A DNA stretch of 64,000 bases from the IMG/VR virus record IMGVR_UViG_3300032116_000001, positions 1 to 64,000 of that record; one strand, 5' to 3'. The notes beneath the pieces were generated by a model that was given only the letters and a program-made list of their open reading frames with translations, searched no databases and was not told where the DNA came from. Below are positions 14,951 to 63,859 of the stretch, one piece after another (positions within the stretch are counted from its first letter, which is position 1; the number at the start of each line of letters is the position of its first letter). Both the position numbers and the translations under genes were made by a program.

Positions 14951-15310
14951 ATGGACTACAAGATCGAATTAAATGAATATTCTGGAATGCTTGTGGGGAA
15001 TAGATGGTACGAGATTGACATCTTCTATTTAAGCGGCGGATGTTTCGTAGTTGCCATTAACTTTTTGGGATTTTATTCAAAAGGAACAAAATTGTCTCAG
15101 CACGGCAAAAAAGAAGTTGTTAAGAAGGCTTGTGGCTCGGTCAATGATGTGAAAGATTTTGTTTTGGCACATTTTGAAATGGAACAATCCACACATGGTG
15201 GTGATGTTGAATTCACTGGGGCGATGATTGATAATGAAGTCCTGACCAAAAGCAAAATCCTTGGTTTTTCGCGGCGCGAAATTGTTATCCCTTCTGCGAG
15301 CTGCTGTTAA
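14951..15310 (+). CDS. hypothetical protein
   Basis: Promoter motif upstream. Confidence 0.65.
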   Translation: MDYKIELNEYSGMLVGNRWYEIDIFYLSGGCFVVAINFLGFYSKGTKLSQHGKKEVVKKACGSVNDVKDFVLAHFEMEQSTHGGDVEFTGAMIDNEVLTKSKILGFSRREIVIPSASCC

Positions 15311-16233
15311 CTTTTTTGATTATCATCATTAGGGTTGGGATCGGGGAAGTTTTCTTGATCTTGAACAAAGTCTCTCAAATCTTCGGTTCGATTAAACCAT
15401 CCTGGGTTTGCTTTGGCATGAGGTCTCGTCTTCAAATAGGCCTCTCGAAGATTCGTGATTTTAATTGCCAGCTCTTGGTCTTTTTCAGGTGTACTTGCGT
15501 ATTCCCACGTAAGTTTCATCGTTGCAGGCCCAAGAACGCCTGTTTGTGGAGCCCCGACAATTCTTTGAAGCAGCCTTATAGCCCTTGTTGTTCCCCCATG
15601 ATATCCCCAGTCGGCGAGGGCCACAGCAGTTCTTTCAGGAAGTTCATTTCCTCGAATGGGGTTCCAATACATCTTTTCCATAATTTTATGGGCTTCATTC
15701 GGGGTCATTTTTCTCACGCTTTGTCTTGGTAAATCCATCGAATCTCGCCATTGATTGTATGTGTTTTGTGTGACGCCCATGTTTGTGGCCCCGCCTGGGT
15801 CAGCGGATTTCTTTCTGTGGACAAATCCGCCTTCTGCTGGCAGCGTGAATTGTTTGAATTTTTTCAGATCGCCACGATTTGGTTTAACTTGTTTTGCTGG
15901 AGCTGGTTTAGTTGCTTGTTGTGGTGCAATAGGCTTGGATGTCTCTTTTCTGATCGGTTCTGGTGCTTTGGCTGCTGGCTGAACAAATTCTGTCGTGATC
16001 TTAACTGGTTCTCGATTTGAATCATAAGCGGGCGTCATTAATGCTTGGCCTGCAAGCATTGCTGGCACGCCGTACATCAGCGCTTTTGCAAATGGGTTTG
16101 TTCGTTTTTTTCTTGATTGAGCAAGTTTAACTGCGATGTCGTCAAGATAGTCAGCCTCTGTATAATGCCCGATATTATCAAGATGGCTGGCTATTCTATT
16201 CAGCTCTCCGATCATAGCAGTAACGTCTCTCAT
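15307..16233 (-). CDS. glycoside hydrolase family 108 lysozyme with PG-binding region and N-terminal leader
   Basis: EGGFVH...DPGGATNMGVTQ...YW...LQRIVGAPQTGVLGPAT...GWFNR. Confidence 0.85.
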   Translation of the reverse strand: MRDVTAMIGELNRIASHLDNIGHYTEADYLDDIAVKLAQSRKKRTNPFAKALMYGVPAMLAGQALMTPAYDSNREPVKITTEFVQPAAKAPEPIRKETSKPIAPQQATKPAPAKQVKPNRGDLKKFKQFTLPAEGGFVHRKKSADPGGATNMGVTQNTYNQWRDSMDLPRQSVRKMTPNEAHKIMEKMYWNPIRGNELPERTAVALADWGYHGGTTRAIRLLQRIVGAPQTGVLGPATMKLTWEYASTPEKDQELAIKITNLREAYLKTRPHAKANPGWFNRTEDLRDFVQDQENFPDPNPNDDNQKS

Positions 16234-36268: not shown

Positions 36269-36658
36269 ATGTCTAAGTGGACCAAAGAAATTCCGACGGA
36301 ACCTGGGTATTATTGGTTCTACGGATGGTTTGAAAAAAACAGCTCTTACTACAAAAAAGACGGAAGTATGTATTTTGTCGAGGTTAGTAAAGCGGCAAAT
36401 TCTCTTGTCTTCGTAACGAAAGGTACGTTTCTTTATCCCACAATGGCCCTTGGACAATGGTCTAAAGCTGATGTCCCCGATGTGCCCGATCTTGGTCCGC
36501 ATTTTTATGAGGGTTGTGAAGCATTGTTGATTGAAGATCAAGAGCGCCATATAGTCGCAAAAATAGATGCCCCCACCACCCGTGTGAAAACCCACCCGAT
36601 TGGTGTTGACCCAATTCATGCGGTGTGGCGGGCAATGGATGATCTTGAATTCATCTAA
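36269..36658 (+). CDS. hypothetical phage protein (WTxExPTEPGxYW)
   Basis: Common phage N-terminal motif. Confidence 0.7.
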   Translation: MSKWTKEIPTEPGYYWFYGWFEKNSSYYKKDGSMYFVEVSKAANSLVFVTKGTFLYPTMALGQWSKADVPDVPDLGPHFYEGCEALLIEDQERHIVAKIDAPTTRVKTHPIGVDPIHAVWRAMDDLEFI

Positions 36659-36989
36659 AAATCCCCTTTCTATCGTTGCAGAAAATAATATAAAACCGAG
36701 GATACACATTTTGATTTCAAAGCAACAAGCACTTGATTATAATACGAAAGAGTCTTTATTGATGCGTTACATTGATTCAAAGATTCTTCTCTATCGCGGT
36801 CGTATATTAGAGTTTTCGGTTGAGGGTCATTCTCAAGAATTGCTTGATAAGTTGATGCCATTGTATCAAGAAAATGGGTGGGATATCAAGCAAATTAATC
36901 GAAAAAAGACAGGTGGACACAGCAAACATCGGTATTGGCGCGTAAAATAATCCCCCATTTTCCATAGCCGAAAATAATATAAAAAGAAC

Positions 36990-37065
36990 GGGTCAGTAGC
37001 TCAGCAGGTAGAGCAGCGGTCTTTTAAACCGCGGGTCGTGGGTTCGAGTCCCACCTGGCCCACCA
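36990..37065 (+). tRNA. tRNA-Lys (TTT)
   Basis: Canonical cloverleaf, CCA. Confidence 0.97.
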
Positions 37066-37081
37066 AATTTCCATCACTCTC

Positions 37082-37306
37082 ATGAACATATATTCAACCA
37101 GCGCAGAAGAAATCGTTTCGGCGATTGTCAAGCAGCAAAAGAACAAGCCGACATTTGTGCATGTTCAAGGTGATGACAGTTATGAATTTTACATGACTGA
37201 TGCCAATGTGTTCCTGTGCTACGATTGGAATATTAACAAGGAATTTAAGGTCGAAACGATTGAAGAACTGATCGACGAAATCAATCGACTCAAGTCGTAC
37301 ACCTAA
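37082..37306 (+). CDS. hypothetical protein
   Basis: 74-aa ORF. Confidence 0.6.
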   Translation: MNIYSTSAEEIVSAIVKQQKNKPTFVHVQGDDSYEFYMTDANVFLCYDWNINKEFKVETIEELIDEINRLKSYT

Positions 37307-37351
37307 TTTTCCCCCGTTTTTACACGATCAGAATCAATATATAAAGGTATC

Positions 37352-38260
37352 ATGGACGAATCGCAGATCATCTTTTATTCTGTTTTTCTGGGGTTGATTT
37401 TCTTGAGCATTGCGATTTACGCATTGTGCCAACACCTAGACAAGAAAAAGAAAGTAGAAAGAGTAGAGCTTTATTCATTTATCAAAACTGGTCTGGCACA
37501 GACGGTTGATATCAAAGTGTTTTTTTCTACAATTGAAACAATGGCTCATAAGCAGCGCTGGAGTTGTTATCAGGTATCTAGGGCGATTGCTGAAGTTACT
37601 TGCACTTCGATGCTTAATAAACCAATAGGATCAGCATTATTTTCCTGGATTGATATACCCCGCTTTGCTGTGTGGTATGCAGTAAATGTTTTTGCCAGCG
37701 AAAACACAAGAAAAATGGCATGCATCAATCCACTTACTGCAATTGACTACGCTCTATATGTTGACAAAATGCCTCACCACACAACCAGATCAGCAGCATG
37801 TAGACTAGGCGTTGTCCCGAACTATCTCGAAGCCCCATACAATACTTTTTTTGCTATTGATCGCAGCTTTGGTTACACTAATGTTGAAAAACAACATAAT
37901 TATAGTTTGCCTTGGAAGGTTTTAGTGTCATCTGGCAGGTTCGCAATAGATTATGCATTAAAGGTTGATAAATCCCCCAACGAAGAAACTAGAGAGGCGG
38001 CATGCAGGCATTTTGTAACGGCGATGGAGTATGCTATTCAGATTGATCGAGGTCCTAATGAAAAAACTCGGAAGGCCTGTTGTGAAGATGCACGCTGCGC
38101 CTTTGAATATGCTTTTAATATAGATAAGTCGGCGCATCCTGATACGTATAGATCAGTTTGCGGTTTGCAGCTCCATCACGGCCTTGTTAGGTGGAAGCAT
38201 GTTAAATTCAATGATTTAGTTAGACAATATGAAGCTTCGTTGGGTAAACCAAAGATTTAA
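37352..38260 (+). CDS. membrane-anchored helical-repeat protein
   Basis: N-terminal TM; ~25-aa repeats AxxYAxxVDKxPxxxTRxAAC x4-5. Confidence 0.75.
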   Translation: MDESQIIFYSVFLGLIFLSIAIYALCQHLDKKKKVERVELYSFIKTGLAQTVDIKVFFSTIETMAHKQRWSCYQVSRAIAEVTCTSMLNKPIGSALFSWIDIPRFAVWYAVNVFASENTRKMACINPLTAIDYALYVDKMPHHTTRSAACRLGVVPNYLEAPYNTFFAIDRSFGYTNVEKQHNYSLPWKVLVSSGRFAIDYALKVDKSPNEETREAACRHFVTAMEYAIQIDRGPNEKTRKACCEDARCAFEYAFNIDKSAHPDTYRSVCGLQLHHGLVRWKHVKFNDLVRQYEASLGKPKI

Positions 38261-60225: not shown

Positions 60226-60438
60226 ATAGTGTATGGGGGGTATTGAAATTTTTCTTAAGGTATCCCTGGTGGGGCCTTGAGTATACGTGAGGAGATTAGA
60301 GTGTTTATTCTCCTCATTTTTTGATGCGAATAACTACGCTATTCGCATCAAGATATTTTGGGCTTTTAAAATGGCTTGTCCATTTTAAAATTTGTTTGCG
60401 ATAAAAATGGTTTTCTTTTCGTAGTATTGTTTGTAGTT

Positions 60439-60975
60439 ATGTTTAAAATAGAAAGTCATTTATCTAAGTTGGCCGAGCATTTTTCTCGGCGCGTTCACAG
60501 TGAGACGGGCTGCACTTATGATGGTGTTGCTTATGACAAGCATTTGGATCATGTTTATGAAGTTTATTATAGATATTCTTATTTGCTTGATGATTCTGTT
60601 AAGACTTTCGTAGAGTGTGGAATTTGGCTTCATGATGTGATGGAAGACTGTCGTATTTCTTACGAGGAGTTATCTATTATGTTTGGTGTTGAAGTTGCTG
60701 ATTTGGTGTATGCGTTGACGAATGAGTTGGGTAAAACTCGATCTGATATTGTGAAGCGTACATATCCGAAAATCCGCGATCATGGTGATTTGGCTATTTT
60801 CGTAAAGCTTTGTGATCGTATTGCGAATACAGAGGCTTCTTTACGTGATGGTAATGAAAAGTACCGATCATTATATTTTCTTGAGTATTTTTATTTTAAG
60901 CAAGCTTTAAAGACTGATGCTTGGGATATCATGTGGCTACATTTGGATTCTTTGCATACGAGGCTTTGCGAATAA
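60439..60975 (+). CDS. HD-domain hydrolase, (p)ppGpp hydrolase/Mesh1-like
   Basis: H...Y..HL, WLHDVMED, VADLVYALT, VKLCDRIAN. Confidence 0.85.
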   Translation: MFKIESHLSKLAEHFSRRVHSETGCTYDGVAYDKHLDHVYEVYYRYSYLLDDSVKTFVECGIWLHDVMEDCRISYEELSIMFGVEVADLVYALTNELGKTRSDIVKRTYPKIRDHGDLAIFVKLCDRIANTEASLRDGNEKYRSLYFLEYFYFKQALKTDAWDIMWLHLDSLHTRLCE

Positions 60976-60978
60976 TTT

Positions 60979-61524
60979 ATGCGTTATTTTTTTGACACTG
61001 AGTTTTTCGAAGACGGCAAGACTATTGATTTAATTTCCATTGGTGTTGTTGCTGAAGATGGCCGCACCTTTTACGCAATTTCTTCTGAATTTGATGTTGA
61101 TCGTGTATTAGATGATCCGTGGATGCGCGATCATGTTTGGTCTTTTATCAAGGATGATTACGAGCATGGAAATACTTTAAGCCGCGAGGAAATAGCTGTT
61201 AAGTTTTTAGATTTCGTTGCTCCTCACCATCACTGGGATATTTTGCATATGAATATTCTGCCATTTGATTCCCCTTATGATTCGGAGTTATGGGGATATT
61301 ACTGTGCTTATGATTGGGTGGCTGTTCGCCAACTATATGGCAAGATGATTAACGGTCCACGAGGATTACCTCATTATTGCAATGATATTATGCAATATCG
61401 CGGCAAGTTGGGTGAGATTGCTTTGCCTCGCATACCCGAAAAGGATCGGCATCATGCTTTAGCAGATGCTGAAGAAGTAAAGCTGATGTTCGAATATTTG
61501 CGTGAAATTGAGGCGAATAAATAA
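60979..61524 (+). CDS. DEDDh 3'-5' exoribonuclease, Rv2179c-like
   Basis: MRYFFDTEF...LISIGVVAEDGRTFYA...AYDWV...HHALADA. Confidence 0.88.
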   Translation: MRYFFDTEFFEDGKTIDLISIGVVAEDGRTFYAISSEFDVDRVLDDPWMRDHVWSFIKDDYEHGNTLSREEIAVKFLDFVAPHHHWDILHMNILPFDSPYDSELWGYYCAYDWVAVRQLYGKMINGPRGLPHYCNDIMQYRGKLGEIALPRIPEKDRHHALADAEEVKLMFEYLREIEANK

Positions 61525-61544: not shown

Positions 61545-61991
61545 TTATTTATTTCTCTTGAAGATTTTCTTCCACCACGGTTGTGGATCATCAATTTTTG
61601 GTTTTGTGTTTTGTATAGGATCGGGGAATTTTGGATGAAAGATTTGTCTTTCATTTTCGATCATTGTTGCGTTATTAATTTGGTTAATCGCCCAGTTTGC
61701 TTTTTGTATGAGAAAGTCTTCAACTTTTGTTTTTTCTCTTTTTCTCTTACCCATTTCATCGATCATTTTAAAGTATGCTTCTTCGGCTTCTTCTGGCGTT
61801 GCGTTTGGAGAAATTCCTAATACATAGAATGGATTTTCTATAACTTGTGCCAATCTTTTCATTACATCCGTGGATGCTGTTTTAATAGCAAGTTGTTTTG
61901 TAATTTCGTCGGCCAATTTATAAAGCCCCATTGAATCCGCGATTTGTGCGAGTTCACAGTATTCATTTATAGAATTCAATGGGTTCATCAT
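61545..61991 (-). CDS. protein with N-terminal AQ-leader and degenerate J-domain
   Basis: NPFYVLGISPNATPEEAEEAY but no HPD. Confidence 0.65.
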   Translation of the reverse strand: MMNPLNSINEYCELAQIADSMGLYKLADEITKQLAIKTASTDVMKRLAQVIENPFYVLGISPNATPEEAEEAYFKMIDEMGKRKREKTKVEDFLIQKANWAINQINNATMIENERQIFHPKFPDPIQNTKPKIDDPQPWWKKIFKRNK

Positions 61992-62521
61992 TACTGTCGA
62001 TTTTGGAGCGCCTTTTGGCTAGCAATTTGTGCATCAAATGCGCTAAGTGTTTTGATACCAAATTCGAGTGATTGTTTGCTTGATTTCAGATGTTGTTCAA
62101 GCGCGGCTCTTGTTTCTGATACGTTCTTGCCTTTTCTTGTGATCGCGTCGAATGCCCAGCCAAGATATCTTTTAATAAGTTCATTTTCTGGAGTAGTGGC
62201 TTGTGCTGGTTGCTGTGCATTGGGATTTTGCATAAAGTTCTGCAAAGACTGAGGGGCTTGTACATTTGCTGGCAATGTGTATACGGGACTGGCTAGAGCA
62301 GGAGTTTGAGGAATATTCACCGATCTTAAATCAACTGGTGCCAATGGATTGTAGGAATTTTGCTGTGGCATTTGTTGTGTAAACGGCATGGGGCTAAATT
62401 GCGCCACTCTTTTCATAACATCCGTGACTACATCTGCTTCTTTGGTCATATTTTGATTATCGAGATCAGATGCGATCCCTGCCAGAGTTTCGAGAATATC
62501 TTTGTTTTCCATTTTTATCAC
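61991..62521 (-). CDS. hypothetical protein with N-terminal AQ-leader
   Basis: LAGIASDLDNQNMTKEADVVTDVMKRVAQ. Confidence 0.7.
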   Translation of the reverse strand: MIKMENKDILETLAGIASDLDNQNMTKEADVVTDVMKRVAQFSPMPFTQQMPQQNSYNPLAPVDLRSVNIPQTPALASPVYTLPANVQAPQSLQNFMQNPNAQQPAQATTPENELIKRYLGWAFDAITRKGKNVSETRAALEQHLKSSKQSLEFGIKTLSAFDAQIASQKALQNRQ

Positions 62522-62548: not shown

Positions 62549-63859
62549 TTATTGATTATGAATCCCTTCTTTATTTGGTCTTCCGATAGAATAATATTCA
62601 TATCCGATTCGTTTCATTTCTTCTTCTTCGAACATATTTCTTCCGTCAAAAATCCGCGGATTTCTCATTTTCTGTTTAATTTCGCGCCATTTAATGTCTT
62701 TGAATTCTTTCCATTCTGTAATGATCAGTATCGCGTCTGTGTTTTCGGCTAGTTCTTCGATAGTGTTAGTCCATTGCACATTCGTTAATATTTTTTCAGC
62801 ATTATGTTTGGCCACGGGATCATATACTTTAACGATGGCTCCTTCCTTGACAAGTTTTTGAATAATTGGAATTGACCTAGCGTCTCTCATATCATCAGTA
62901 TCGGGTTTAAATGCAACTCCGAGCACTCCGATAATTTTGTCATTGACTCCATTGAGATTCGTTTGAATTTTTTGGATAAATTCTTTAGGCATTTGTTCAT
63001 TAATTTCTTTAGTTGCTTTAAGCATTTTGAAATCATATCCGATTTGATCGGCGATATGGATAAGTGCGCTTGTATCTTTCCCGAAGCAGCTTCCACCCCA
63101 TCCTATTCCAGCCCCGAGGAATTTATCTCCGATTCTATGATCGAGTCCCATTCCTCTTGCCACTTCTTTTACATCGGCCCCGACTTGTTCGCATATTTGT
63201 GCAATGGCGTTGATAAAGCTAATTTTCGTGGCGAGGAATGCGTTTGATGCATATTTAATCATTTCGGCGCTAATTGTATCTGTGAGGAAAACTTGTGTTT
63301 GTAGTTCTTGATATGCTTCGATCAATTTCTCCGCGGTTTTCCAGTTATCTGTTCCGATCACGATTCTATCTCCATTCATAGCGTCATGGATTGCGCATCC
63401 TTCTCTAAGGAATTCTGGATTACTTACGACATCGAATGTTGTTGGAAATTTTTGATATTTTTGAATAATTTCTTTGACTCTATGTGCTGTTCCAGGGGGT
63501 ACTGTGGATTTATTCACCACGATGATATGTTCTCTCATGGACTCTCCGATTTCTTTCGCAACATTATCAATATATTGCAGATCGGGGCTGCCGTCTTCTT
63601 TTTCTGGAGTTCCCACGCACACAAAGACAATTTCGCCCCAGTTTGCGGCTTGTTCCACCGTGTTTCCGTAGAATATTTGTGCTTTAGCGTCTTCGATCAT
63701 ATCTTGGAGTTCTGGCTCATAGATAGGGCATTCTCCATTTTTGAGTTTTTTAATTTTTTCTGGATCACTATCTACGCACATAACATCGTGCCCGATGTTT
63801 GCCATGATTGCTGTTTGCACGAGTCCCACATATCCTGCTCCGATCACGCTAATTCTCAT
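62549..63859 (-). CDS. ugd: UDP-glucose 6-dehydrogenase
   Basis: GAGYVG, VCVGTP, NKSTVPPG, SNPEFLREG, KYASNAFLA, GGSCFGKD, AFKPDTDDMRD, DGRN. Confidence 0.96.
   Translation of the reverse strand: MRISVIGAGYVGLVQTAIMANIGHDVMCVDSDPEKIKKLKNGECPIYEPELQDMIEDAKAQIFYGNTVEQAANWGEIVFVCVGTPEKEDGSPDLQYIDNVAKEIGESMREHIIVVNKSTVPPGTAHRVKEIIQKYQKFPTTFDVVSNPEFLREGCAIHDAMNGDRIVIGTDNWKTAEKLIEAYQELQTQVFLTDTISAEMIKYASNAFLATKISFINAIAQICEQVGADVKEVARGMGLDHRIGDKFLGAGIGWGGSCFGKDTSALIHIADQIGYDFKMLKATKEINEQMPKEFIQKIQTNLNGVNDKIIGVLGVAFKPDTDDMRDARSIPIIQKLVKEGAIVKVYDPVAKHNAEKILTNVQWTNTIEELAENTDAILIITEWKEFKDIKWREIKQKMRNPRIFDGRNMFEEEEMKRIGYEYYSIGRPNKEGIHNQ

What the first reader, a model, noticed from the sequence alone, without database searches (positions are those of the whole stretch)
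61545..62521. Shared N-terminal leader ending in (K/R)xAQ on unrelated proteins, including the lysozyme
Three N-termini share the pattern L..IA..lD..g....AD......(K/R).AQ and then diverge completely. They are 15307..16233 (ELNRIASHLDNIGHYTEADYLDDIAVKLAQ), 61991..62521 (TLAGIASDLDNQNMTKEADVVTDVMKRVAQ) and 61545..61991 (ELAQIADSMGLYKLADEIT...DVMKRLAQ). Inference: a capsid-targeting propeptide removed by a prohead protease, by analogy to the T4 capsid-targeting sequence and phiKZ head proteins. The GH108 enzyme would then be virion-delivered rather than a lysis endolysin.
Basis: partly seen in the sequence, partly recalled or inferred. Interest (0 to 1): 0.6.

Follow-up and report, generated by a model that had tools for sequence, protein, structure and literature searches.

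The report
Shared N-terminal hairpin tag, jumbo phage
The three look-alike N-termini are copies of an undescribed 37-residue two-helix module that heads at least 13 unrelated proteins in this 379-kb freshwater jumbo phage and hundreds more in its uncultured relatives; it is probably an address tag, perhaps for loading proteins into the capsid, but neither packaging nor cleavage has been shown.

Summary
The three N-termini belong to one module family. A profile built only from other contigs finds all three (E 2e-11, 1e-8, 2e-4).

- **In this genome:** the 378,848-bp virus genome holds 13 confident copies and about 6 weak ones.
- **Elsewhere:** a profile search of 1.84 billion proteins gave 2,360 hits, some of them true TPR proteins. 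Related jumbo contigs carry 7-17 copies each, often as tandem arrays of small genes that each start with the module.
- **Structure:** the module folds as a confident alpha-hairpin (pLDDT 96) and looks TPR-like in sequence. Pfam, NCBIfam, PHROGs and PDB have no model for it.
- **Position:** 92% of carriers have it at Met1. Conservation collapses right after (K/R)-hydrophobic-(A/S)-Q, and Q is present in only about half.

The capsid-targeting and cleavage reading is plausible but unproven. In its favour, [KR][LIVM]AQ occurs three times in the 1,426-aa prohead protease-scaffold polyprotein (6 of 20,000 shuffles reach that). One site lies just after the protease domain and is conserved in relatives. 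Against it, C-terminal, internal and multiple copies exist, and no virion data exist.

The GH108 enzyme carries a SAR-like hydrophobic segment after the module, so "virion-delivered, not endolysin" is not established.

The parts
16117..16233 (-). Hairpin module, residues 1-39 of the GH108 protein, ending in KLAQ
   Evidence: Alignment. Profile hits. AF2 secondary structure shows helix 2-19 and helix 26-42, but that model is low-confidence.
16024..16116 (-). Basic stretch (SRKKRTNPFAK) followed by a weakly hydrophobic Gly/Ala-rich segment (residues 51-70), a candidate signal-anchor or SAR segment
   Evidence: Sequence and hydropathy: maximum KD19 is 1.16. The G003 orthologue has the same layout. 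This is an inference; topology was not tested.
15307..16023 (-). Pro/Ala/Lys-rich linker, GH108 muramidase domain (residues 128-214, EGGF motif) and partial PG_binding_1, through the stop codon
   Evidence: Pfam PF05838 at 2.5e-20 and PF01471 at 0.0015. phrog_315 endolysin. NCBIfam holin-associated muramidase, below cut-off.
62399..62512 (-). Hairpin module, residues 1-38 of the 173-aa protein, ending in RVAQ
   Evidence: The AF2 model of this sequence with a 64-row alignment gives pLDDT 95.7, helix 3-19 and helix 23-39.
61991..62398 (-). Cargo part of the 173-aa protein: Q/P-rich and low in complexity, with no family match
   Evidence: Its only relatives are near-identical copies in freshwater metagenomes.
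61845..61991 (-). Hairpin module, residues 1-49 of the 148-aa protein, with a 10-residue insertion in helix 2, ending in RLAQ
61545..61844 (-). Cargo part of the 148-aa protein, with a weak J-domain-like start that lacks the HPD motif
   Evidence: Pfam DnaJ E = 0.071, below cut-off. Its start codon overlaps the upstream gene's stop codon.

Best explanation
The three N-termini are copies of a roughly 37-residue antiparallel two-helix module. It is TPR-like in sequence: helix, then an LD-x-x-G turn, then a helix with E-A-D/N, ending in (K/R)-hydrophobic-(A/S). The module serves as a common address tag on many unrelated, mostly small, acidic, fast-evolving proteins. It occurs in a lineage of uncultured freshwater jumbo phages related to Bacillus phage G.

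Most likely mechanism (inferred, not shown):
1. The hairpin docks its cargo onto one common partner in the assembling prohead, probably the protease-scaffold core.
2. The cargo is thereby enclosed in the head.
3. The prohead protease (the N-terminal domain of the 1,426-aa polyprotein at genome positions 133087-137367) cuts at or next to the (K/R)-Phi-(A/S)-Q boundary.
4. The freed cargo leaves with the DNA at infection.

Shown here: the family, its fold, its N-terminal position, the sharp boundary, selection at the protein level, and recurrence of the end motif in the protease-scaffold protein.

Inferred: docking, encapsidation, cleavage and ejection.
For: - **Copy number in this genome:** 13 confident copies, almost all starting at the initiator Met.
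- **Position across the family:** of 267 distinct carriers, 246 have the module at the N-terminus. Cargo has a median length of 148 aa and is acidic.
- **Arrays in relatives:** related jumbo contigs hold 7-17 copies, with up to 12 consecutive genes each starting with the module and having unrelated C-termini. This resembles the T4 internal-protein loci with their shared capsid targeting sequence (T4 CTS as summarised in PMC5694885).
- **Boundary:** information content falls from more than 3 bits to under 1 bit right after (K/R)-Phi-(A/S)-Q.
- **Selection on the protein:** at conserved residues only about half of the codons are identical.
- **Fold:** AF2 gives a hairpin with pLDDT 95.7.
- **Protease present:** it matches phrog_18299 and is 37% identical to phage G gp19. 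It is fused to a long scaffold-like region and lies next to the portal and the major capsid protein.
- **Motif in the polyprotein:** [KR][LIVM]AQ occurs 3 times there (6 of 20,000 shuffles reach 3). There are 5 occurrences in the head block against 1.07 expected (P = 0.005).
- **Site conservation:** the site about 50 residues after the protease domain is conserved as (R/K)LAQ-x-AGT in three relatives. The third site is conserved as (K/R)(I/Y)AQ.
- **Position in the genome:** module gene 120465-120926 lies inside the conserved head-gene block and has orthologues in all three close relatives.
- **Lineage:** module-bearing contigs share the phage-G-type capsid protein.
Against: - No proteomic, structural or genetic data exist for any carrier. 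No cultured phage has the module.
- 28% of carriers have two or three copies. 7 have only a C-terminal copy and 14 an internal first copy. In this genome the copies at 121545-122333 and 239215-239901 are C-terminal. An N-terminal propeptide model does not predict these.
- Q follows the A/S in only 52% of members. In relatives the second polyprotein site reads KIAS, and the site in the neighbouring scaffold-like protein reads RVAA. The motif may simply be a helix end.
- Many module genes lie among DNA-metabolism and sugar-metabolism genes rather than head genes.
- The motif test was made after the motif had been seen, on one genome plus three close relatives.
- The GH108 member has a membrane-type segment, which is unusual for head-internal proteins.
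Confidence: 0.4

Rival explanations
1. The hairpin is an uncleaved docking or oligomerisation module. A Rop-like hairpin can pair into a four-helix bundle. It would tether family members to each other or to a common hub that is not part of the capsid, in the infected cell. The family would then be a set of host-takeover or anti-defence effectors sharing one adaptor.
For: - C-terminal, internal and multiple copies exist.
- The closest structural look-alikes are dimerising hairpins such as Rop, although the matches are not significant.
- The sequence is TPR-like: 8 of 129 top profile hits are true TPR_10/12 proteins.
- Module genes are scattered among replication and metabolic genes.
- The cargo is acidic, disordered and fast-evolving, as in many anti-defence proteins.
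Against: - It does not explain why 92% of copies start exactly at Met1 or why conservation stops so sharply.
- It does not explain why the end motif recurs at conserved places in the protease-scaffold polyprotein.
- No partner has been identified.
Confidence: 0.3
2. For the GH108 protein only: it is the phage's exported lysis muramidase, of signal-anchor or SAR type. The hairpin stays in the cytoplasm as a regulatory or tethering domain, and the enzyme is not packaged.
For: - The layout is hairpin, then a basic stretch, then a weakly hydrophobic Gly/Ala-rich segment, then a Pro-rich linker, then GH108 with PG-binding.
- G003 has the same layout at only 30% identity.
- The domain matches endolysin families.
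- Only 2 of 267 other carriers have a strong membrane segment, so this member is atypical.
Against: - No holin or spanin was recognised next to it.
- The genome also encodes an SLT enzyme with a Sec signal peptide, and G003 has a second, plain GH108. Another enzyme could therefore be the lysis enzyme.
- Known SAR domains sit at the extreme N-terminus, not behind a 40-residue folded module (from general knowledge of P1 Lyz and phage 21 R).
- The hydropathy is low (KD19 of 1.16).
Confidence: 0.4
3. The hairpin anchors variable proteins to the outside of the virion (capsid decoration, whiskers or tail appendages), much as conserved N-terminal anchor domains hold variable tailspikes.
For: - The architecture is a conserved N-terminal part followed by a variable C-terminal part, arranged in arrays.
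- One member lies in the structural gene block.
Against: - The cargo is short, acidic, largely low in complexity, and has no fibre, Ig-like or enzyme domains.
- A muramidase with a hydrophobic segment does not fit an external decoration role.
Confidence: 0.08
4. The similarity is due to chance, or to a compositional or TPR-like artefact, and has no common function.
For: - The module is short and helical, and it cross-hits true TPR proteins.
- The count of 2,360 hits is inflated by such proteins.
Against: - Independent profiles give E-values down to 1e-13 within the genome.
- The module sits at Met1 in 246 of 267 carriers.
- Arrays occur in many contigs.
- The residues are under purifying selection.
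- Pfam TPR models do not hit the carriers.
Confidence: 0.02

Closest known systems
T4 capsid targeting sequence (CTS) on internal proteins IPI, IPII, IPIII, Alt and gp24, removed by prohead protease gp21
   Same: - A shared N-terminal leader sits on otherwise unrelated, small, fast-evolving proteins.
- The genes are clustered in variable arrays.
- Conservation ends at the putative cut site.
- A prohead protease is encoded.
   Different: - The T4 CTS is 10-20 residues, unstructured, and cut after Glu in (L/I)-x-E (PMC5694885). Here the leader is a 37-residue folded hairpin ending in (K/R)-Phi-(A/S)-Q.
- There is no sequence similarity, and no Peptidase_S77 hit in the genome. The protease is of the phage G gp19 type.
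- Copies also occur internally and at C-termini.
- Cleavage and packaging are untested.
Propeptides of head and ejection proteins in phiKZ-like phages such as SPN3US, cut by gp175/gp245 at A/S/G-x-E
   Same: - These are jumbo phages with many head-internal proteins and paralogous families.
- Processing is by a morphogenetic protease.
   Different: - Their propeptides are often longer than 100 residues and are not one shared module (PMC5694885).
- The cut motif and the capsid lineage differ.
Helix-turn-helix coat-binding domain at the C-terminus of the P22 scaffolding protein; C-terminal targeting tail of the HK97 protease; encapsulin cargo-loading peptides
   Same: A small terminal element recruits a protein to the interior of an HK97-fold shell. 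The P22 element is also a two-helix hairpin.
   Different: - Those elements are C-terminal and occur on one or a few proteins, not on a large multigene family.
- There is no sequence relation.
- The comparison rests on general knowledge and was not tested here. The one complex prediction with the capsid protein gave no answer.
TPR repeats (Pfam TPR_10 and TPR_12)
   Same: The sequence pattern (A-x-x-L-x-x-I/L-A, then G-x-Y-x-E-A) and the helix-turn-helix fold are alike. The module profile cross-hits true TPR proteins.
   Different: - The module is a single unit, not an array.
- Pfam TPR models do not reach the carriers.
- It sits at the extreme N-terminus.
SAR or signal-anchor endolysins (P1 Lyz, phage 21 R), compared with the GH108 member only
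   Same: - It is a muralytic enzyme preceded by basic residues and a weakly hydrophobic Gly/Ala-rich segment.
- The GH108 domain is typical of endolysins.
   Different: - A 39-residue folded module precedes the hydrophobic segment.
- No holin was seen nearby.
- Topology is untested.

Membership tests
Protease-removed capsid targeting leader (T4 CTS type) | A shared leader at the extreme N-terminus of otherwise unrelated proteins | tested here: met
   12 of the 13 confident copies in the genome start at or next to the initiator Met. 246 of 267 carriers overall do so. Exceptions exist: 7 carriers have only a C-terminal copy, 14 have an internal first copy, and 74 have several copies.
Protease-removed capsid targeting leader (T4 CTS type) | The genome encodes a prohead maturation protease | tested here: met
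   Residues 54-243 of the 1,426-aa ORF at 133087-137367 match phrog_18299 and phage G gp19 (37% identity). The gene lies between the portal and the capsid protein.
Protease-removed capsid targeting leader (T4 CTS type) | The leader ends in the protease's cleavage motif, which is also used in other head proteins | tested here: inconclusive
   [KR][LIVM]AQ occurs 3 times in the protease-scaffold polyprotein (6 of 20,000 shuffles) and 5 times in the head block against 1.07 expected. Two of the three polyprotein sites keep the Q in relatives; the third reads KIAS there. Q is present in only 52% of leaders, and neighbouring sites vary. The protease's real specificity is unknown.
Protease-removed capsid targeting leader (T4 CTS type) | The cargo is present in virions with the leader removed | not testable with these tools
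   The phage is uncultured. No carrier was found in cultured phages.
Protease-removed capsid targeting leader (T4 CTS type) | Homology to the T4 system itself (CTS sequence, gp21 Peptidase_S77) | tested here: not met
   PF03420 has no match in the genome. The leader has a different length, sequence and fold. It is therefore an analogue at most, not a member.
TPR repeat proteins | A match to Pfam TPR models, and tandem repeats forming a superhelix | tested here: not met
   No carrier in the genome hits a TPR model. Of 129 top hits, only the 8 true multi-repeat proteins do. The module is a single hairpin.
Glycoside hydrolase family 108 (15307-16233) | A Pfam PF05838 match above cut-off, and the N-terminal E-G-G-(Y/F) catalytic motif | tested here: met
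   73.3 bits against a cut-off of 21.2. EGGF and DPGG-x-TN-x-G are present in the sequence.
SAR or signal-anchor endolysin (15307-16233) | An N-terminal, weakly hydrophobic Gly/Ala-rich membrane segment preceded by basic residues | tested here: inconclusive
   The segment at residues 51-70 is preceded by SRKKRTNPFAK. KD19 is only 1.16. The layout is conserved in G003. However, the segment lies behind a 39-residue module, not at the N-terminus, and no topology predictor or experiment was available.
SAR or signal-anchor endolysin (15307-16233) | A holin or pinholin (and spanin) gene nearby | tested here: not met
   The gene lies alone on the minus strand among plus-strand genes of unknown function. 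Only one weak hydrophobic ORF (14951-15310) adjoins it. Divergent holins could have been missed.

The most novel reading that the evidence does not exclude
The hairpin is a sequence-readable address tag that marks the whole set of proteins loaded into the head, and later ejected, by an abundant lineage of freshwater jumbo phages. A phage-G-type protease removes it at (K/R)-Phi-(A/S)-Q. The tagged set includes a muramidase with its own membrane segment, which would act from the outside at infection. The encapsidated proteome could then be predicted from metagenomes alone, and the tag could be used to load foreign proteins into large capsids.
Probability: 0.35. Interest if true: 0.75.

Novelty: new variant of a known kind. 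Interest (0 to 1): 0.55.

Why it matters
If the hairpin is an encapsidation tag, it would identify from sequence alone dozens of cargo proteins per genome. These are candidates for early-acting host-takeover or anti-defence factors. The phage lineage concerned is common in lakes: the window's DNA is held by freshwater runs from at least 12 studies, and its capsid protein has more than 900 relatives.

It would also define the cleavage rule of a poorly known prohead protease family, and provide a folded, portable tag for loading proteins into large capsids.

Even if the tag points elsewhere, this is a large, undescribed, strongly selected module family that no domain library covers. It links many orphan genes to one mechanism.

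Tried and rejected
- **No close relatives in GenBank phages.** Megablast of the region, tblastn of the 173-aa protein and tblastn of two consensus-like modules found nothing.
- **Single-protein searches of IMG/VR found nothing**. The 16-row alignment was too diverse for pattern search. A tighter alignment then worked.
- **Genome contigs of 185,579 prokaryote species:** no relative by the one pattern used.
- **PDB:** the sequence profile gave only insignificant designed-TPR and similar hits. Foldseek on the hairpin model gave only generic hairpins, with E above 3.
- **ESM Atlas by features:** scores of 0.85 or less, so leads only.
- **Complex prediction of capsid protein with the module:** no answer, score 0.00. 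This is evidence neither for nor against binding.
- **Single-sequence fold of the GH108 protein:** pLDDT 38, unusable except as a hint of helices.
- **Phage G and the 485-kb record LR745208.1 lack the module**. The phage G papers give no cleavage sites.
- **Literature searches found no description of the family**.
- **Upstream regions:** inspection by eye showed no shared promoter motif that would date expression.
- **RiPP-precursor reading rejected.** I considered a conserved leader with a variable core, but the cargo is 50-300 aa, includes an enzyme, and is not Cys/Ser/Thr-rich.
- **DNA-level repeat or gene conversion rejected.** About half of the codons at conserved residues differ.
- **Procedural points.** No other genetic code was needed.

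Full report
**What is in the window**

- 15307-16233 encodes 308 aa. A GGAG lies 8-13 nt upstream of its ATG.
- 61991-62521 most likely starts at the ATG at 62512, giving 173 aa.
- 61545-61991 encodes 148 aa. Its ATG overlaps the stop codon of the gene before it.

The first 38-49 residues of the three align at 34-36% identity, and the sequences then diverge completely. The third copy has a 10-residue insertion. Pfam confirms GH108 plus a partial PG_binding_1 domain in the first protein and finds nothing above cut-off in the other two.

**The genome**

The window is the first 64 kb of a single 378,848-bp IMG/VR virus record. It has 40.6% G+C and is rated complete by CheckV.

The nearest cultured relative is Bacillus phage G, with 30% portal identity and 48% major capsid protein identity.

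The head block lies at about 113-141 kb.
- The portal is at 130479-132941.
- A 1,426-aa ORF at 133087-137367 has a prohead protease as its N-terminal domain. That domain matches phrog_18299 and is 37% identical to phage G gp19.
- An acidic scaffold-like gene is at 137467-139305.
- The 284-aa capsid protein is at 139986-140840 and has no N-terminal delta domain.

DNA matching the window is held by freshwater metagenome runs from at least 12 studies.

A profile made from the three N-termini finds 13 confident copies in the genome and about 6 weak ones. Almost all sit directly at an initiator Met. Weak copies lie internally (333301-333867, 251945-253009) or at the C-terminus (121545-122333, 239215-239901). 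The protein at 331754-332731 has two copies.

A profile built only from metagenomic proteins of other contigs recovers the three window proteins with E = 1.9e-11, 1.3e-8 and 1.6e-4. Chance is therefore excluded.

**Distribution**

A profile search of 1.84 billion representative proteins gave 2,360 hits at E ≤ 1e-3 and 48 at E ≤ 1e-10. In many of the best 150, the module occupies residues 1-39 exactly.

Of 129 top hits scanned against Pfam, 8 are true multi-repeat TPR_10/12 proteins and the rest have no family. The module is therefore TPR-like in sequence, and the raw count is inflated.

IMG/VR holds it in 41 loci, mostly on contigs of 100-358 kb. Five such genomes carry 7-17 copies each. In these contigs, up to 12 consecutive small genes each start with the module and continue with unrelated sequence.

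Two subfamilies are visible. One begins MNKRQIIASLNKIANELD and ends (K/R)-(L/I/V)-(A/S)-Q. The other begins M-L/I-K-E-L-I-K-L-A-N and ends K-K-x-A.

Carriers from both subfamilies encode the phage-G-type capsid protein. Phage G itself and the 485-kb record LR745208.1 lack the module. No relative was found in prokaryotic genome contigs or in GenBank phages by tblastn. Pfam, NCBIfam and PHROGs have no model for it, and neither does the PDB.

**Properties of the module**
- With a 64-row alignment, AlphaFold2 gives a confident hairpin: pLDDT 95.7, helix 3-19, turn, helix 23-39. Foldseek finds only generic hairpins such as Rop, and the matches are not significant.
- Among 267 distinct carriers, the first copy is N-terminal in 246, C-terminal only in 7 and internal in 14.
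- 74 carriers have more than one copy, and only 2 have a strong membrane segment.
- The cargo has a median length of 148 aa and is acidic.
- In 100 non-redundant full-length members, information content stays at 2-4 bits up to K/R (97%), L/I/V (93%) and A/S (99%). It drops to 1.7 bits at Q (52%) and is below 1 bit after that.
- Within arrays, about half of the codons at conserved residues differ, so selection acts on the protein.

**Does the end motif look like a protease site?**

[KR][LIVM]AQ occurs 28 times in the proteome against 7.8 expected from composition. Nine or so of these are in module copies.

Three lie in the protease-scaffold polyprotein, at residues 305, 568 and 1172. Only 6 of 20,000 shuffles of that protein reach three.

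The head block, with module genes excluded, has 5 against 1.07 expected (P = 0.005). Six of the 18 non-module occurrences lie in the first 40 residues, against 15% expected.

In three relatives whose protease domains are 75-80% identical, the sites behave as follows.
- The first site, about 50 residues after the protease domain, reads (R/K)LAQ-x-AGT in all.
- The second reads KIAS.
- The third reads (K/R)(I/Y)AQ.

In the neighbouring scaffold-like protein, the G000 site RVAQ reads RVAA in the relatives. In gene 125224, RLAQ reads KLAE or RLAA.

This is suggestive of a (K/R)-Phi-A site but is not proof. The test was made post hoc, on one clade, and the pattern could simply be a favoured helix end.

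**The GH108 member**

After the module come SRKKRTNPFAK and a weakly hydrophobic Gly/Ala-rich stretch (residues 51-70, KD19 of 1.16). These are followed by a Pro/Ala/Lys linker and then GH108 with its EGGF motif.

G003 has an orthologue at 30% identity with the same order of parts, and also a second, plain GH108. G000 also encodes an SLT enzyme with a Sec-type signal peptide at 261423-262184. No Phage_lysozyme match was found, and no holin was recognised beside the GH108 gene.

The layout fits a signal-anchor or SAR-type exported muramidase at least as well as a packaged one. If the leader were removed, the new N-terminus would itself look like a signal-anchor. I cannot decide between these two readings.

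**Expression hint**

Two freshwater metatranscriptome libraries hold three identical 151-nt contigs that lie only on 61781-62203, inside the two module genes. DNA carry-over cannot be excluded.

**Interpretation**

The best-supported reading is a shared address tag. The T4-like version, with docking in the prohead, cleavage and ejection, is the leading mechanism at about 0.4. It fits the following.
- The position at Met1.
- The sharp conservation boundary.
- The arrays of tag-plus-variable-cargo genes.
- The motif in the protease-scaffold polyprotein.
- A conserved member inside the head block.

T4 leaders are 10-20 residues long, and phiKZ-type propeptides are often longer than 100 (PMC5694885). 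A 37-residue folded hairpin cut at a different motif by a different protease lineage would be a new variant of this kind of system, not a member of the T4 system. PF03420 is absent.

The main rival, at about 0.3, is an uncleaved docking or oligomerisation module for a partner that is not part of the capsid. That reading better explains the C-terminal and multiple copies.

A complex prediction of the module with the capsid protein gave no answer and counts for nothing.

Noticed in passing
window 62549-63859 (-); also genome 119231-120436 (+) and 305229-306614 (+): The phage carries sugar-nucleotide genes: a UDP-glucose/GDP-mannose dehydrogenase (Pfam families), a UDP-galactopyranose mutase about 50% identical to bacterial and prophage glf, and a galactosyltransferase-like gene. 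Together they suggest phage-directed glycan synthesis or modification.
   Followed up: partly
window 60979-61524 (+) and 60376-60975 (+): An Rv2179c-like 3'-5' exoribonuclease (Pfam 4.6e-9) lies next to a weak HD-domain protein. Both converge on the two module genes.
   Followed up: no
genome 133087-137367 (outside the window): The prohead protease is fused to a scaffold-like region of about 1,100 residues. That region ends in two Cys-x2-Cys ... Cys-x2-Cys zinc-ribbon-like motifs and a conserved C-terminal tail (L-D-V-S/T-I-T-W). The arrangement is conserved in three relatives.
   Followed up: partly
genome 329190-331757 (-) and 350054-351523 (-): Two PcfJ-like proteins (Pfam PF14284) each flank a cluster of module-bearing genes, at 331754-333867 and at 346115-350057.
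   Followed up: no
genome 261423-262184 (+): An SLT-domain protein carries a typical Sec signal peptide. It is a second candidate lysis enzyme and lies about 550 bp from the module gene at 260586-260870.
   Followed up: partly
G007 (IMG/VR contig of 177,708 bp behind L054): 36547-37404, 168858-169682 and fragments at about 133 kb: One related contig holds two full-length copies of the major capsid protein gene plus several fragments.
   Followed up: no
G003 39.7 kb (L039 1476-4211; L073 3-1070) and L053 13127-13609: A roughly 912-aa protein in relatives ends with a C-terminal copy of the module. It has no counterpart in this genome.
   Followed up: partly
genome 290577-292217 (+), 236831-239002 (-), 248729-250969 (+), 377617-378846 (-): The genome encodes a GroEL-type chaperonin, a topoisomerase II large subunit, an exonuclease V or Dda-like helicase, and an RNA ligase.
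   Followed up: no
window 61781-62203: Three 151-nt contigs from two freshwater metatranscriptome libraries match only this part of the 3.5-kb stretch that was laid, inside the two module genes. This could reflect expression or DNA carry-over.
   Followed up: partly
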